Of a DNA stretch of 64,000 nt, positions 49,531-55,317 are shown one piece after another. The notes beneath the pieces are model-generated. The model did no database searches. It was not told the DNA's origin and worked only from the letters and a program-made list of their open reading frames with translations. The stretch's first letter is position 1, and every line of letters begins with the position of its first letter. The position numbers and the translations under genes are program-made. Origin of the DNA: Phallusia mammillata (lineage: Eukaryota); NCBI GenBank assembly GCA_965637545.1, contig OZ281498.1:20212001-20276000 (forward strand), in the 5' to 3' direction.

Positions 49531-52500
49531 TCAATCACATCTGATCTTCATTGTTGATCCTTTGATCGCATTATCAGCTTTCCAGTGAGACCAGATCATG
49601 TTTTGCCAATTGCCTGTTGATCTTCCCCAATTACCGTTAAGTTTAGAATCAAAACAACTTGTAAACCACCACCCGCTTTCCCACATAAGTGCACAGTTGC
49701 TTGCACTTCTGTGTCACAACGTTTCAGTAAAATATCGATAAACAAGCGAAAACAAATTTAAATTAAGATGTGTTTTACGCTTGAGCGCAAATCCATTTTA
49801 GTTAGTATTTTGATTTATGTCATGTTATTTGGCACTATTTTCTTTCCATATTTCACATACATTTTTTATCTAAGCTTATTTGTATTGCGCCGAAAAATAA
49901 ATTTTCGAGGAAAAGGATCGTTTAACTTTTGGTCATTGTGGTAAAGTTATCGTACTTACGTATCATGATCCTGATCTTGAGTAGAAAATTGCATCCCGTT
50001 GTGTCCTTTCAGACTGTCACCAGCCGTTCCGCTGTATCCAGAAACATGTAAACGGTAATTGTCTGATTCGCCGTCGATTGCAAACGAACTTGAAAAAAAA
50101 TTCTTACTTATGTGAATCGTTTTTTACTAATTAATTAGGATAGAAGCATCATGGTTTTAAAAGATATTTAAACTAAAATACCACATAATAAATTTAGGTA
50201 CCAACTCGTACGCTAAAAACTGGAACTGACTTCCGGAGTTTCCATAAACAAAGAACGCACTTGTTCTTTGATCGCCAATGAAAGTTTACATTTATTTATT
50301 CTTATTTACTTTGAGGTTAACATAGGCCAGGGGTGTCCAATTCGAAAGCACCGCCGTGCCAATCTAGGTTTTAAAATATACTCGCGTGCCAACGTTTGGT
50401 AGGCCTACTTTTTTCAAGCCATGTCTTAAACGTCTTACCGGTAGAAAAAAATATGTTGTCAAACGCGAGTAATGAGTAAACTTGTTTATGATACTCCAGA
50501 AACCTTTTATAACATACCATGTCGCTTAAAGCGCAGAATCCATAATATGGAATATAATACGACAGCATAAAGGCCCGGAATTATCCAAAATTCGACAGTT
50601 TCAAACGCCTAAAAGTATACGGATCAAGTCTAAAAACGACTAATTTATTTAGTGGATTTGTGTAACCTTGATACTGATCATCTTTACTGAAGTTAGAAAG
50701 GCCAAAAAGAATCAATAGAAAAATATTAATTACGTGACAAATCCTGATGTTTAGCATCTGAATGTCCAAAAATTGCGTGCCATTTTCAAATGCTCTGCGT
50801 TCCACTTTTGGCACGCATGCCACGTGTTGGACACCCCTGACATAGGCTATGTCTTATATGAGATGTGTCGAAACGTTACGTTGTTTTACAATTAACTTTA
50901 TTTTTGTTTTCAAATTACTGATGTAAAGAAATTGGTTTATATCATATAACATTTAGTGGCGCCATAAACGCCAGATTAATTTCTAAGCTTGGTGCACAGA
51001 TTAAGCTGCACAAGATTAGTCTTATGTTTTGTGTCATAATTAGGGCAATTATTTTTTGACCTAAAAAACGAAAAAAATTGACCTACAAATTGAAAATTTT
51101 GACTTTAAAAAACTTTTTTTTTTGACAAAATTTTGACCTATGAAAAAGTAGTTAAATTACACATTATTGTACAAAAAGTTAAAATATGGCTGTACGCTAC
51201 TCTGTAGACCAAATTTTTAACAGAAGGGCAAAACTCTGAACACAGACCTAGTCTGTTCTGAAAAGGGAAATGAGCTAAGTAAAAATCACTGCCAAAAAAC
51301 TGCAGCTAAGACACAACGAAAATTATTCAATACAGTTGTCTAAACGAAAGATACATGAAATACCAAAAGCAAAACCGAAGCAAGAGCTGCACCTAACCTG
51401 CAGCTGCCGTAAAATGACTTGGGACCTACCAAAATTTTGCACGTTTTGAGATGTGTTGAGCATCACGCCATATCAACCTAATTATTTCACTCACTTTATG
51501 GTTTATGATTCACAATGAGTAGGCAATGGGCCAATTACAACAGTATAAAGTAGGCTACAAGGTGTAAAATGGACAGTTCACTGAGAGTGCAACCTCTACA
51601 ACACCACGACAATGTTTGTAAACAATTTTAACTTTGTAAAAAATTATGACTTTGTGAACAATTTTGACTTTTTTTTGTCAAGTCAAAAAATATTTGCCCT
51701 AGTCATAATATATATCAGGGGTCACCAAACTTTTTTCACCGCGGGCCGGATAAGTTTAATAATAATTTGCGCGGGCCGGACAGTTTACATGCCCCAGCGC
51801 CGTCTTTTCGAACTTAGCTCGCAAGGCGATTTTGATAGGGGAGCCAAGATATGGTCTTTCTGTACTCCCATTAAAAATCTGGTGAAAAAAACGACTATTA
51901 AATTGTATAGTTAGTCTCATCTTACAAGCAATGCTTGTATATTACGTCATAAGTGACCCAAGAAAGCAATGGTTTGCGCACAATTGACACTTGTAGTCTT
52001 GTTTGTGACGTAACAATCTGGCTTTGGGTCAAACCTGGGCGTTATAATCCCACAAAACAAGGTAATATTAATTCTACATATCGCGACAGGAAAACTTTCG
52101 TAAGAAGTAGATTATTTTTTAAATGTTACAAAGTTATCAATGCGATTTGACAACCTAAAAAATGTGGTCGCGGGCCGGATGAAATGACCTCGCGGGCCGT
52201 AGTTTGGTGACCCCTGATATATATTGTGATGTTTGTGGTACCTGATTGTTCGCATTGTTTGCACACAATAGGCGTACAAAACGTTGGACGCGACTATTAG
52301 GCTGTTAATACTCTTTTTCGTACCACAAAAACTGTTTAGAGCAGTTTAAACATGAAAACATTTAGCAAAGGACTTTTAATGATGTCACAGCCGGCAGTAC
52401 ATATATTTTAATAAACATGTTCACGGCAGAGTCAGAATCTTTAAAACCGTGAATTATGTTTTTATTTACTCTCAGCTTTAATAAAATGGAACACTTAGTC

Positions 52501-55317
52501 TTAGTATGAGCCGTTTTTCTGCCGATATTTGGCCTGTGGGCCCCTGTTAAACCCATACATCATCATCATAATCTTACGTGTATTGTGCGAAGGCTGTAGA
52601 GTCATCAAATCCTCTTAAATCGATTCTCAAACTGCACCTCTGTCCGCTCGTCATCCTATTTATTTTTTCCAATCCTGAATTGTTTAAATTTAAAGTTTAG
52701 CTTGTTTACTACTCAACTTACGCGGCCAAAGACAATACACAAAAGTATTTTACCCAGCCAAAATTCGCCCCTCATATCTCCGAACCCATCTTTGTATTCC
52801 TGCCAATTTCTGCCAAAATTCACACTTCCGTCAAATCGTTTTTGAAAAACCTGTAGGAAATATAAGACTATTTTCATTATGTTTCTTTCTTAATTACCAA
52901 CTCTTCGCTTACTGTCCAACCGCCTTCGAGGACTACTCCTTCGTCGTTACTAATCAGTCCCTGGTTCGCTGGGCGATTGTTATTTAGTGTGCTCTCGATC
53001 ACTGAAAAATACAAACACATGGAGAAAAAATATTTCACTTATCGGAGCGATTTCGACATTGGGCTTAAGTTTGAATAAAACGGGCTTGATTCTGGCCTGA
53101 CTTACTCGGCCACAAGGTTTTTCGCCGTGCTTATAAGTTTCACAATAAGCTTGAACCGAGCGGAACTTGCCGTGTTGACGAAACAGTGGGGCACAAGGTT
53201 TTGCAAAACGTTTTGAAAGGTTAAGAAACACTGGGTAAGACAAGCCGAAATCGCTTATTAAAAAAAAATCTTTAGTTTTTCGGCAAATGGAGGTTCTTGG
53301 CTTCCAGGGGAACAGGGCAATTCTGGCAAAAATGGCAATTTTAAATTAAAAAAAAATTAATTTCTGAATAAGTGTGCCAAAGTTTATCCTTGTTGTCTAA
53401 AACTAACCCATGTTATTCAAATCACTGCCCTGTACATCGCATTGTCAGCAAAAAAACTATCATGACATTTTCCATTCGTTCAAATTAAATCGATTAAAAT
53501 CGACTTACTGGTCTCACAATTCCTTCCAGAGTATTTTTCCGGACATAAGCAGCCATAATCAGCGAGCAAGTCGACGCATGTGCCGTTATTTGCACACGGG
53601 TTCACGTAGGAGCACACATCAAAATCTACAACAATAACACAGATGTCCAAACTAAGGCCCACGGTCAAATTGGTCCTTCAAATGGAAACTGTGGCCAAGG
53701 AAGAGATGTGAATTTTTTAACATAGGGTGATAGTTCATGAACTAATAGTGTTAGTAAGCAATTACAATCATTTTTGTTTGTAAACAGAATATTCATCTGT
53801 GAAATCGACCGGAGATCAACCTTTTTTACAGCGACATAACAAAACCACTAAAATCCGGTTGTGAATGTAAACTGCTTGGGAGAGTATGAGCATGATTAAT
53901 TCATGCAACTAAACTTTTGTTAGGAAAGGTTCGGCTCGCGTGGAATTATTTATCAGGGTAAATTTATATGGCAATCAAGTAATCAGGGTTACCCATGATT
54001 ACACCATTTAAATCGTCTTGGTAATAAATTCAAGCCAAATAATGCGTGAAGCGTATATGTGACCAGTAGAACGATTTTTGAAAAAAATATTTTACATTGT
54101 CGTTGTCTGCACCCTGCAGCTTTTTACAAACGTATAAAAATGTTTCACCTTCGAAAGAAAACCAGTCGGTGTTGGTCGTATTTGTGCCGTTGTACGCCTT
54201 TGCCGTCATTGCATAGATGACAACCTTGCCACCAGCGACTGTGACAACAAATTCTTTGTAAATGCAACTTAAGATTCCAAAAAAGGCTTTTTGCAAGTGA
54301 ATTATATATCCACATTGTTATTGTATGAAATAGCAGAACCTACAAACATACATGTCATGAGCAATCTAGTTTGCAGGCATTCGTCAAAGCACCTACCCTT
54401 TGTTAAGTTTCAAAAATCAAGCCTGTTATTTTACTGACCTGAAATAGCTCCTCGCCTTTTTGCAGCAGCGCAGACAGAGCTGTTGGTGAAATATTTTCCA
54501 CTCGTGTACGTGTACGAAGCACCGGTGCATTTTGCAGGACAGTAGACATGAGTGATAGGTAATTCGCAGTTGCCAGTTGTTTTGCAAGTCACTAACACAT
54601 TGTTAATTTTTAGGATAATAATAACAGCATGTCAGTTGAAAATATTCTTACTTGAAAAGGTGTACGAATATTTGCTGGCAGAGCAGGTTTGAGTTTGAAC
54701 GCCATTTCTATCTTTTCCGTACAACTGAGCTCCTCGGCCCGGATTGCGAAAAACCTGTACTGGTCCACCGGAATCTAAAGAAGTTTTTTGCATTGAGTTT
54801 CTTTAAAAACCCCAAAAATGGAGGATATAACTTCACTCACTATCAATCTGTTGGTCGTACATTGCTGCAAGACATATCGGGCCGCTTGTGTAGACCCCAT
54901 TTCCACACAACGACGGATTTTCTTCCCAGCAGTTCGCGGGGCAAAGTATGCTGGTGATCGAGTGCTTCAAGTCAGAAAACTGTGTCTTGCACGTCACTAA
55001 AGCAACACTTTAGGTTCTTGTACATTTTTGTGAAGGTTATGTTAGACGCGAAGTCTCGTCCAAGGAATTATAATAAATATCAAGGGGTATTATGAAAACT
55101 TTATGAAAAAGTTATGTGGTCGAACAAGTGGCAATTATTTCTCGGAACGACGAACCGTTCCCGCTTTTTTACCATTAATTACAAACAATGCAAATATAGA
55201 ACAATAGCTAAGTCATCAATTGGTTAATTTAATTACGTTACCTGACAGTCCCAATAAAGTCACAATGAAGTCAGATACGAATATCAGCACCAAGGCACTA
55301 GCTTTCAGTAAATTCAT
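49531..55317 (-). CDS. Secreted LCCL-LCCL-EGF-FReD protein (434 aa, 11 exons)
   Basis: Exons 55317-55242 (signal [25 protein letters not shown]), 54996-54841 and 54774-54652 (LCCL1), 54591-54439 and 54238-54149 (LCCL2), 53625-53509 (EGF), 53001-52913, 52850-52754, 52674-52578, 50088-49960, 49708-49531 (FReD). Sum 1305 nt = 435 codons, all open, all GT-AG. An alternative in-frame ATG lies at 55323. Confidence 0.88.
50328..50839. mobile_element. hAT MITE, 512 bp, in an intron of the LCCL-EGF-FReD gene
   Basis: CAGGGGTGTCCAA...TTGGACACCCCTG; perfect TSD ACATAGGC. Confidence 0.92.
51716..52216. mobile_element. hAT MITE, 501 bp
   Basis: CAGGGGTCACCAAACT...AGTTTGGTGACCCCTG; TSD ATATATAT; subterminal CGCGGGCCG motifs. 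Confidence 0.92.

What the first reader, a model, noticed from the sequence alone, without database searches (positions are those of the whole stretch)
49531..55317. Intact secreted LCCL-LCCL-EGF-fibrinogen-domain protein, an architecture I do not recognise
Seen: 11 exons splice into a 434-aa open frame, and most are invisible in the ORF track. LCCL1 reads [66 protein letters not shown]...RNGVQTQ...SYTF, which aligns by eye with the cochlin LCCL (TC.T...D......VLCPGGC......V.GN.VY....IC.AA...G.I.NSGGPV.V...PGR). LCCL2 reads VYCPAKC...[27 protein letters not shown]...YNGT...WFSF. A 6-Cys EGF and a FReD follow. Established: LCCL occurs in Limulus factor C and cochlin, both tied to antibacterial defence, and FReDs are the recognition domains of ficolins and tachylectin-5. 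Inference: this is a dual-recognition innate-immune protein. I know no named protein with this domain order.
Basis: partly seen in the sequence, partly recalled or inferred. Interest (0 to 1): 0.9.

Follow-up and report, generated by a model that had tools for sequence, protein, structure and literature searches.

The report
Sea-squirt LCCL-EGF-fibrinogen hybrid lectin gene
This sea-squirt gene encodes a secreted protein with two LCCL domains, an EGF domain and a fibrinogen-type lectin head; the same design already sits unstudied in databases as two Phallusia 'ficolin-2-like' entries, and this copy took its head from the ficolin-like gene next door.

Summary
Eleven minus-strand exons (55317-49531), all GT-AG, splice into a 434-aa open frame: signal peptide, LCCL, LCCL, EGF, fibrinogen-related domain (FReD). 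Pfam confirms each domain on single exons.

The architecture is rare but already public. Two Phallusia mammillata entries, both auto-named 'Ficolin-2-like', share it. They are about 90% identical to this gene in LCCL-LCCL-EGF and about 41% in the FReD. An exhaustive HMMER search found no other LCCL relative carrying a FReD. This scan had already noted the same architecture on other pieces of this genome (s1-375383 and others).

New here: this copy is a hybrid.
- Its FReD exons, flanking introns and 3' end match the adjacent collagen-FReD gene (79.5% amino-acid identity).
- That homology stops inside intron 6.
- Directly upstream of the stop lies a truncated relic of the family's own first FReD exon.

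The head was therefore swapped.

Not shown:
- Expression of this copy. The RNA-like contigs match paralogues.
- The exon 6-7 junction.
- Any ligand.

Immune dual recognition remains an inference. The relic keeps a usable acceptor and an in-frame stop, so a truncating isoform is possible.

Verdict: real gene, new variant of the FReD-lectin theme, moderate interest.

The parts
55242..55317 (-). Exon 1: start codon and signal peptide (25 aa plus 1 nt, ends in phase 1)
   Evidence: model; hydrophobic core with Kyte-Doolittle windows up to 2.8. The same start is seen in P0003 and P0052.
54841..54996 (-). Exon 2: N-terminal half of LCCL1, phase 1-1
   Evidence: Pfam LCCL E 2.6e-6. Cochlin 1JBI E 1.4e-3.
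54652..54774 (-). Exon 3: C-terminal half of LCCL1, phase 1-1
   Evidence: The local LCCL profile covers residues 27-117. The joint 54774/54841 appears in a paralogue RNA-like contig.
54439..54591 (-). Exon 4: N-terminal half of LCCL2, phase 1-1
   Evidence: Pfam LCCL E 1.3e-4. The intron position is the same as in LCCL1.
54149..54238 (-). Exon 5: C-terminal half of LCCL2 (shortened), phase 1-1
   Evidence: The local LCCL profile covers residues 121-192. The joint 54238/54439 appears in a paralogue contig.
53509..53625 (-). Exon 6: six-Cys EGF domain, phase 1-1
   Evidence: Pfam EGF E 6.7e-7.
53258..53324 (-). Relic pseudo-exon in intron 6. It has an acceptor AG at 53324-53323. Positions 53322-53270 are homologous to the first FReD exon of the P0003/P0052-type paralogues. 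An in-frame TAA lies at 53260-53258. The relic is truncated where homology to gene B begins.
   Evidence: tblastn of the P0052 exon peptide gives its best hit in the whole window here, E 3.4e-4, 10/18 identical. P0003 gives 12/19 identical. The breakpoint lies at 53265.
52913..53001 (-). Exon 7: short, Cys-free N-terminal piece of the FReD, ending in GGWT. It replaces the canonical A-subdomain start.
   Evidence: No Pfam hit. It is homologous to gene B exon 2, with a 15-nt in-frame indel.
52754..52850 (-). Exon 8: FReD, profile positions 45-77
   Evidence: Pfam Fibrinogen_C E 8.1e-12.
52578..52674 (-). Exon 9: FReD, profile positions 80-109. Carries the extra Cys314.
   Evidence: Pfam E 1.5e-3. 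The Cys is shared by gene B, P0003 and P0052.
49960..50088 (-). Exon 10: FReD, profile positions 111-159. Contains the D-x-D-x-D motif (DQDHD).
   Evidence: Pfam E 1.1e-9. The best solved match is FIBCD1 4M7F, E 3.2e-10, with the motif aligned.
49531..49708 (-). Exon 11: FReD P-domain with its Cys381-Cys394 pair, the C-terminal Cys433 and the stop codon
   Evidence: Pfam E 7.1e-8. It matches tenascin-R and ficolin-2 structures at E 3e-7 to 1.5e-6.
49447..49452 (-). AATAAA polyadenylation signal, 78 nt after the stop
49428..53265 (-). Block homologous at DNA level to the neighbouring gene B (56524-58996). It includes exons 7-11, their introns, about 265 bp of the upstream intron and the 3' end. 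This is the swapped-in FReD cassette.
   Evidence: blastn gives 74-87% identity in collinear pieces.
56639..59352 (-). Neighbouring gene B (context). It encodes a signal peptide, a collagen G-X-Y stalk, a neck and the same type of FReD in 6 exons. A 1-nt deletion in its fifth exon puts the 896-nt total out of frame.

Best explanation
SHOWN. This is a structurally intact gene of a lineage-restricted ascidian family, Phallusia mammillata or a very close relative. The family encodes secreted proteins with the order signal peptide, LCCL, LCCL, EGF, FReD.

This copy is a hybrid. Exons 1-6 belong to the family's conserved LCCL-LCCL-EGF 'stalk', about 90% identical to the two database members. Exons 7-11 are a FReD cassette of the type carried by the adjacent collagen-FReD (ficolin-like) gene.

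The recombination joint lies in intron 6. On its 5' side is a truncated relic of the family's original first FReD exon. On its 3' side is intron sequence homologous to the neighbour's intron 1. Both acceptors are phase 1, as is the EGF exon's donor, so the swap kept the reading frame.

INFERRED. The protein is secreted. Its FReD head binds a carbohydrate or acetylated ligand in a Ca2+-dependent way; the D-x-D-x-D motif and the P-domain disulfide are kept. The LCCL pair supplies a second binding or aggregating surface, and the EGF domain acts as a spacer. The mature chain has 21 cysteines, an odd number, with five in LCCL2. The unpaired one may replace the collagen stalk as a means of covalent multimerisation.

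The most likely role is humoral pattern recognition or agglutination. Family members would differ mainly in their FReD heads.
For: - Gene model and splice sites.
- Domains.
- Same architecture in P0003 by Pfam (LCCL x2, EGF, Fibrinogen_C) and in P0052.
- Identity by region: LCCL-LCCL-EGF 89.7% and 90.6% to P0003 and P0052. FReD 41-42% to those two, but 79.5% to neighbouring gene B.
- DNA homology with gene B runs from 49428 to 53265, introns included, and stops inside intron 6.
- The relic exon sits immediately upstream of that point, on the right strand and in the right phase behind an AG. It is the best hit in the whole window (E 3.4e-4).
- The FReD cassette has no first exon, start codon or signal peptide of its own, so it can only be translated through exon 6.
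- Constraint: dN/dS between the two cassettes is 0.30 at dS 0.40. Three of the four coding indels between them are multiples of three.
- Paralogue transcripts in an RNA-like run show the predicted exon 1-2, 2-3, 4-5 and 5-6 junctions.
- Rarity: of 51 LCCL relatives found among 1.84 billion representatives, only P0003 also has a FReD. The nearest other relatives are LCCL-only repeat proteins of Ciona, Clavelina and amphibians.
Against: - No RNA evidence for this copy. The contigs over exons 1-6 are 91-95% identical and carry P0003/P0052-specific residues. They include K-Q-R in exon 3, ANKGT in the EGF domain and a P0052-like exon 1, so they come from paralogues.
- The exon 6-7 junction was not observed.
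- The runs' RNA status is itself a guess.
- The relic keeps a plausible acceptor (pyrimidine-rich, CAG) closer to exon 6 than the real exon 7 acceptor. It is followed by an in-frame stop. Its use would give a truncated LCCL-LCCL-EGF product or a transcript degraded by nonsense-mediated decay.
- Against the type-1 outgroups, this copy's FReD has 10 lineage-specific amino-acid changes and gene B has 2. The changes include GGWW to SGWW, which hints at relaxed constraint or a change of specificity. The numbers are small and the outgroup is distant.
- The FReD lacks profile positions 1-44 and the A-subdomain disulfide.
- The residue after the second P-domain Cys is Phe. It is His in ficolin-2 and tenascin-R. 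From memory, that His contacts acetyl groups in tachylectin-5A and FIBCD1.
- No binding, secretion or immune-induction data exist.
Confidence: 0.5

Rival explanations
1. The gene is a non-functional or crippled chimera. It looks intact but is silent, or exon 6 is mostly spliced to the relic acceptor at 53322. That would give a premature stop at 53260-53258, so no LCCL-FReD protein is made from this copy.
For: - No contig in four runs matches this copy's exons at allele-level identity.
- The relic acceptor and in-frame stop are present.
- This copy's FReD has an excess of lineage-specific changes, 10 against 2.
- The neighbouring gene B is itself frameshifted.
Against: - The 1305 nt are open and all 20 splice sites are canonical.
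- dN/dS is 0.30, and the indels relative to gene B are in frame apart from B's own 1-nt deletion.
- The exon 7 acceptor has the stronger pyrimidine tract.
- A polyadenylation signal is present.
- Logan contigs drop rare transcripts, so absence proves nothing.
Confidence: 0.25
2. The protein is functional and secreted but is not an immune receptor. It could be an extracellular-matrix, tunic or adhesion component. It could also be a self/non-self or gamete-recognition ligand like the fibrinogen-like v-Themis proteins of Ciona.
For: - FReDs in ascidians serve self-sterility as v-Themis (PMC7018956).
- From memory, tenascins, angiopoietins and MFAP4 are non-immune FReD proteins. They are among the best structural-sequence matches here.
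- From memory, the cochlin and vitrin LCCL proteins are matrix components.
- The acetyl-pocket His is replaced by Phe.
- The fast-evolving P-domain exon (dN/dS about 0.6) fits any recognition arms race, including a reproductive one.
Against: - From memory, LCCL proteins such as factor C, cleaved cochlin and CRISPLD2 bind bacteria or LPS.
- Ascidian ficolins act in the lectin complement pathway (PMC5465252).
- The gene sits beside a ficolin-like gene, and its head derives from that type.
- No tissue expression data favour either reading.
Confidence: 0.2
3. The model is an artefact that joins two genes. LCCL-LCCL-EGF and the FReD cassette would be separate transcription units.
For: - The exon 6-7 junction is not observed.
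- The FReD cassette is a tandem duplicate of a neighbouring gene.
Against: - The cassette lost its own first exon (collagen and signal peptide) at the breakpoint. It has no in-frame start before Met294 and no signal peptide.
- Exon 6 has a canonical phase-1 donor that matches the phase-1 acceptor of exon 7.
- The two database paralogues join the same LCCL-LCCL-EGF unit to a FReD.
Confidence: 0.05

Closest known systems
Phallusia mammillata 'Ficolin-2-like' proteins A0A6F9DDD3 (CAB3245545.1, P0003, 422 aa) and A0A6F9DDK6 (P0052, 427 aa)
   Same: They have the same order: signal peptide, LCCL, LCCL, EGF, FReD. The LCCL-LCCL-EGF part is 89.7-90.6% identical. They share the extra Cys in the FReD B-strand and the C-terminal Cys-Asp ending.
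   Different: Their FReD is a different type, 41-42% identical. It has a Cys-pair-bearing first exon and a shorter P-domain. In this gene that first exon survives only as a truncated relic in intron 6. Both entries are unreviewed and uncharacterised. The name 'ficolin' is a misnomer because they have no collagen.
Ficolins (collagen stalk plus FReD), including the adjacent gene B at 56639-59352 and the Halocynthia and Botryllus ficolins
   Same: The FReD cassette is homologous to gene B at 79.5% amino-acid identity, introns included. The protein is secreted and has a lectin-type head.
   Different: There is no collagen-like region or neck. LCCL-LCCL-EGF takes the stalk's place. This removes the MASP-binding collagen stalk that, from memory, defines ficolin function in the lectin pathway.
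Invertebrate FReD proteins with other N-terminal modules: snail IgSF-FREPs, and the mollusc and cnidarian EGF-FReD proteins
   Same: They follow the same theme of a FReD head on interchangeable N-terminal modules, in lineage-specific expansions. The nearest large ESM Atlas clusters are EGF plus Fibrinogen_C from molluscs and cnidarians.
   Different: None of those clusters carries LCCL. No somatic diversification is implied here.
LCCL proteins: cochlin and vitrin (LCCL+vWA), CRISPLD1/2 (CAP+2 LCCL), Limulus factor C, and the LCCL-only repeat proteins of Ciona (LOC100181691), Clavelina and amphibians
   Same: The LCCL fold signature is shared, with a match to the cochlin LCCL structure. Tandem LCCL units occur as in CRISPLD and the LCCL-repeat proteins, which are the nearest sequence relatives.
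   Different: None of these has a FReD. LCCL1 here has two extra Cys, and LCCL2 is shortened and has five Cys.
Apicomplexan CCp/LAP proteins (LCCL plus an NEC / COLFI / FBG-like module)
   Same: They are the only published proteins I found that combine LCCL with a fibrinogen-related module (PMC2211786; PMC11285972).
   Different: They are unrelated in lineage and overall architecture. Their NEC module corresponds to the N-terminal sub-unit of the fibrinogen globular domain, which is the very part missing here. The combination arose independently.

Membership tests
Fibrinogen-related domain (Pfam Fibrinogen_C, PF00147) | Significant match to the family profile | tested here: met
   Exons 8-11 each hit PF00147. 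Three are above the 22-bit cutoff on their own. Together they cover profile positions 45-221. PDB FReDs match at E down to 3e-10.
Fibrinogen-related domain (Pfam Fibrinogen_C, PF00147) | Complete domain, including the N-terminal A-subdomain with its disulfide (profile positions 1-44) | tested here: not met
   Exon 7 (29 aa, no Cys) gives no Pfam hit. Only its terminal GGWT aligns. Gene B has the same truncation.
Fibrinogen-related domain (Pfam Fibrinogen_C, PF00147) | P-domain disulfide and the D-x-D-x-D Ca2+-site motif | tested here: met
   Cys381 and Cys394 align with the ficolin-2 and tenascin-R Cys pair. DQDHD aligns with DRDSD of FIBCD1. That these residues bind Ca2+ is from established knowledge and was not tested.
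Ficolin | Collagen-like G-X-Y region N-terminal to the FReD | tested here: not met
   The 434-aa model has no G-X-Y run. The neighbouring gene B has one. The database name 'ficolin-2-like' for the paralogues is therefore inexact.
LCCL domain (PF03815) | Profile match above the curated cutoff, with the four conserved Cys | tested here: met
   Exon 2 scores 28 bits against a cutoff of 22.6. Exon 4 scores 22.5 bits as a half-domain. The full domains score 74 and 39 bits on a local profile. P0003, about 90% identical here, scores 79.6 bits over 2 stretches. The canonical Cys are present in both domains.
EGF-like domain (PF00008) | Six-Cys pattern and a profile match | tested here: met
   Exon 6 scores 29.9 bits against a cutoff of 21.5. 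The six Cys are at positions 204-236.
Phallusia LCCL-LCCL-EGF-FReD family (P0003/P0052) | Same domain order and high identity across the whole length | tested here: inconclusive
   The domain order is the same and the 5' half is about 90% identical. The FReD is of another type at 41% identity. This gene is a member by its stalk and a chimera by its head.
Expressed, correctly spliced gene | Copy-specific transcripts with the exon 6-7 junction | tested here: inconclusive
   Only paralogue-derived contigs were found, and no contig lies on exons 7-9 or 11. The data are contigs rather than raw reads, and the run type is a guess.
Pattern-recognition lectin | Binding to microbial or acetylated ligands, and induction by infection | not testable with these tools
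   This needs recombinant protein and challenge experiments.

The most novel reading that the evidence does not exclude
The Phallusia genome runs a germline 'mix-and-match' recognition system. A conserved LCCL-LCCL-EGF stalk and collagen stalks exchange FReD heads by intron-level cassette swapping between clustered genes. This would generate a combinatorial repertoire of secreted receptors. This locus preserves one such swap with its breakpoint and relic exon still visible.
Probability: 0.2. Interest if true: 0.75.

Novelty: new variant of a known kind. Interest (0 to 1): 0.45.

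Why it matters
FReD lectins are a recurrent substrate for lineage-specific immune diversification, as in snail FREPs, mosquito FREPs and ficolins. An LCCL-LCCL-EGF stalk on a FReD head has not been described for any animal in the literature I could search. It pairs two domain families that are each linked to microbe binding.

This locus also gives an unusually clean, datable example of exon shuffling. 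The phase-1 modules, the intronic breakpoint, the relic of the displaced exon and the donor-type gene next door are all visible in about 10 kb.

If the family is expressed and binds microbes, it would add a collagen-free arm, and so probably a MASP-independent one, to tunicate humoral recognition. If this copy is silent, it still documents how such architectures are assembled and lost.

Tried and rejected
1. A canonical FReD N-terminal exon hidden in intron 6. The 121-aa ORF at 53345-52983 looked vaguely like one, but it has no Pfam hit even at E 10. It overlaps intron sequence homologous to gene B's intron. Rejected.

2. A collagen-exon remnant in intron 6. The G-X-Y-like reading near 53290-53340 is on the wrong (+) strand. 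On the minus strand the same bases are the relic of the type-1 exon. Rejected.

3. RNA confirmation of this copy.
It returned only Logan contigs at 91-95% identity over exons 1-6, which match the paralogues' residues.
- It also returned heavy pile-ups on intronic repeats.
- This is useful for the family's junctions but not for this copy.

4. Database searches with the full spliced protein were not done. I used exon references and the paralogue ids instead.

5. Dating the swap from relic decay. This is not possible, because the equivalent exon is only 54% identical between the two functional paralogues. The relic's 56-63% identity is therefore uninformative.

6. ESM Atlas look-alikes of P0003 gave only EGF-FReD and FReD clusters, none with LCCL. 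This is a lead only.

7. Structure prediction was not run. Only paralogues could be submitted, and the tool returns no coordinates with which to test the proposed Cys314-Cys433 disulfide.

Full report
OBSERVATION

I rebuilt the gene model from the sequence. Eleven minus-strand exons between 55317 and 49531, every intron GT..AG, give a 1305-nt frame of 434 codons plus a stop.

Exons 2-6 are all symmetric phase 1-1 modules, and exon 7 is entered in phase 1. Each LCCL domain is split by an intron at the same position and phase. That split suggests the LCCL exon pair arose by tandem duplication.

An AATAAA lies 78 nt after the stop. The N-terminus is a typical hydrophobic signal sequence. It matches the N-termini of two database paralogues.

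DOMAINS

The spliced protein has no reference, so I scanned the exons one at a time.

| Exon(s) | Pfam family | Result |
|---|---|---|
| 2 | LCCL | E 2.6e-6, above the curated cutoff |
| 4 | LCCL | E 1.3e-4, at the cutoff for a half-domain |
| 6 | EGF | E 6.7e-7 |
| 8-11 | Fibrinogen_C | collinear, profile positions 45-221 of 221 |
| 7 | none | no hit |

A local profile built from database LCCL repeats covers residues 27-117 and 121-192 of the model. Exon 2 matches the solved cochlin LCCL structure 1JBI. Exons 10 and 11 match solved FReDs, with FIBCD1, tenascins, ficolins, angiopoietins and tachylectin-5A among the hits.

The FReD keeps the P-domain Cys pair and a D-x-D-x-D motif aligned with FIBCD1's. 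It differs from canonical FReDs in three ways:
- It lacks the first ~44 Pfam profile positions, including the A-subdomain disulfide; exon 7's 29 Cys-free residues stand there instead, about 15 fewer than in a canonical FReD.
- It has two extra Cys, at positions 314 and 433.
- It has Phe where ficolin-2 and tenascin-R have His after the second P-domain Cys.

The mature chain has 21 Cys. Five of them are in LCCL2, so one is unpaired.

IS THE ARCHITECTURE KNOWN?

I ran an exhaustive HMMER search with exon 2 against 1.84 billion representatives. It found 51 relatives at E <= 1e-3. A local phmmer search with this gene's FReD shows that only one of them, P0003, also has a FReD.

P0003 is CAB3245545.1 / A0A6F9DDD3, 'Ficolin-2-like' from Phallusia mammillata. 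Pfam calls LCCL x2, EGF and Fibrinogen_C on it. A word-indexed search with its N-terminal 240 residues found one more, P0052 (A0A6F9DDK6), from the same species and with the same name.

The nearest other LCCL relatives are LCCL-only repeat proteins of Ciona intestinalis, Clavelina lepadiformis and amphibians. ESM Atlas look-alikes are EGF-FReD clusters without LCCL.

In the held literature, the only LCCL plus fibrinogen-like combination is the apicomplexan CCp/LAP family. Its 'NEC' module is the N-terminal sub-unit of the fibrinogen globular domain. No paper on an animal LCCL-FReD protein turned up.

Earlier notes of this scan report the same architecture as a tandem cluster on other pieces of this genome and call the organism an ascidian (s1-375383, s1-385390 and others). 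I did not see that DNA.

The architecture is therefore rare and unstudied, and apparently lineage-restricted. But it is already public. My searches would miss LCCL-FReD proteins whose LCCL is too diverged from a 51-aa query.

THIS COPY IS A HYBRID

| Comparison | LCCL-LCCL-EGF identity | FReD identity |
|---|---|---|
| This gene vs P0003 | 89.7% | 41.1% |
| This gene vs P0052 | 90.6% | 41.9% |
| P0003 vs P0052 | 93.4% | 68.3% |

The FReD instead matches a gene immediately upstream on the same strand, gene B (59352-56639). Gene B encodes a signal peptide, about ten G-X-Y triplets, a neck and a FReD that is 79.5% identical to this gene's.

DNA homology between the two genes is collinear from 49428 (past the stop) to 53265. 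It includes the introns and about 265 bp of the intron upstream of exon 7. It then ends, 77 bp short of where gene B's collagen exon would lie.

Directly upstream of that point lies a relic of the first FReD exon of the P0003/P0052 type. It occupies 53322-53270, on the right strand, behind an AG and in phase 1.
- It is 10/18 identical to P0052 and 12/19 identical to P0003.
- It is the best hit of that peptide anywhere in the window, at E 3.4e-4.
- It breaks off at the homology boundary and runs into a TAA at 53260-53258.

No other type-1 FReD exons remain in the window.

I read this as a non-homologous joint between a type-1 LCCL-LCCL-EGF-FReD gene, broken inside its first FReD exon, and a tandem copy of the collagen-FReD gene, broken in its intron 1. 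The frame survived because all the modules involved are phase 1. This refines the sibling note s1-411732. The LCCL stalk was not grafted onto a naive FReD to create the architecture. An existing LCCL-EGF-FReD gene had its head replaced.

IS IT FUNCTIONAL?

Evidence for function:
- The frame is open and all splice sites are canonical.
- dN/dS against gene B's cassette is 0.30 at dS 0.40. It is about 0.2 in exons 7-10 and about 0.6 in the P-domain exon 11.
- The coding indels between the two cassettes are 15, 3 and 9 nt, plus one 1-nt deletion in gene B.
- The cassette has no first exon or signal peptide of its own, so it is translatable only through exon 6.

Evidence against, or unknown:
- Those contigs show the predicted 1-2, 2-3, 4-5 and 5-6 junctions, but at 91-95% identity.
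- They carry paralogue-specific residues: D-to-Q in exon 3, N-to-K in the EGF domain, and a P0052-like exon 1. They therefore document the family and not this copy.
- That the same-species runs carry P0003/P0052-type sequence is also my basis for placing the genome in Phallusia mammillata or a very close relative.
- No contig lay on exons 7-9 or 11. Loose ends at 50090 come from other type-2 FReD paralogues spliced at the same site.
- The relic's acceptor could compete with exon 7's and would introduce a premature stop.
- Polarised with the type-1 FReDs, this copy has 10 unique amino-acid changes against 2 in gene B, including GGWW to SGWW. This suggests relaxed or redirected selection after the swap. 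The numbers are small and the outgroup is distant.

MECHANISM (INFERENCE)

I propose a secreted, collagen-free FReD lectin. The head would bind a glycan or acetylated ligand with Ca2+. The LCCL pair would provide a second binding or aggregating surface. From memory, LCCL in factor C, cleaved cochlin and CRISPLD2 is linked to binding of bacteria or LPS. The EGF domain would act as a spacer, and the unpaired Cys could provide covalent dimerisation.

Without a collagen stalk the protein would not be expected to engage MASPs as ficolins do (from memory). Opsonisation or agglutination is therefore more likely than complement activation.

A non-immune role cannot be excluded. Examples are a matrix or tunic function, or gamete self-recognition as with the fibrinogen-like v-Themis proteins of Ciona (PMC7018956). 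Ascidian ficolins do sit in the lectin pathway (PMC5465252).

VERDICT

The gene is real and the domain calls are right. The novelty claim is overstated, because the architecture exists in public databases and elsewhere in this genome. It remains unstudied.

The added value of this locus is the visible head-swap with its relic exon. The finding is a new variant of the FReD-lectin theme, of moderate interest.

Noticed in passing
window 56639-59352 (minus), frameshift near 57202/57203: The neighbouring collagen-FReD (ficolin-like) gene B has six GT-AG exons totalling 896 nt. A 1-nt deletion relative to this gene (GGATACAG becomes GGTACAG) in its fifth exon breaks the frame. It is either a young pseudogene or an assembly error. 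Its FReD otherwise keeps more ancestral residues than this gene's FReD.
   Followed up: partly
window 50318-50849, 51025-51717 and 51703-52229 (intron 9): Three MITE-like insertions with terminal inverted repeats lie in intron 9. The arms are 23 nt at 83%, 49 nt at 73% and 29 nt at 97% complementarity. The 23-nt and 29-nt repeat arms contain CAGGGGT. Contigs from all four runs pile up on them with many variants and internal deletions, so they are multi-copy and appear in transcript-like data.
   Followed up: partly
window 50088-50090: Contigs of runs X3 and X4 end here and continue with unlike sequence. For X4 the continuation reads as the end of a gene-B-like exon (…AYAQY). Other type-2 FReD paralogues are therefore spliced at the same exon 9-10 junction and are present in those runs.
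   Followed up: partly
window 52369-52427 vs 59942-60000: A 59-nt stretch in intron 9 matches, at 91.5% and in inverted orientation, a stretch upstream of gene B. It is probably another dispersed repeat.
   Followed up: no
window 18763-18906 (+): A weak tblastn hit of the EGF region falls on a Cys-rich reading (…[16 protein letters not shown]…) typical of TIL/VWC-type modules. This would fit the SCO-spondin gene that another note places in this window. Not examined.
   Followed up: no
P0003 vs P0052 (database paralogues): Within the family the LCCL-LCCL-EGF stalk is far more conserved (93% identical) than the signal peptide (48%), the first FReD exon (54%) or the FReD (68%). This suggests either strong constraint on the stalk or its homogenisation by gene conversion.
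   Followed up: no
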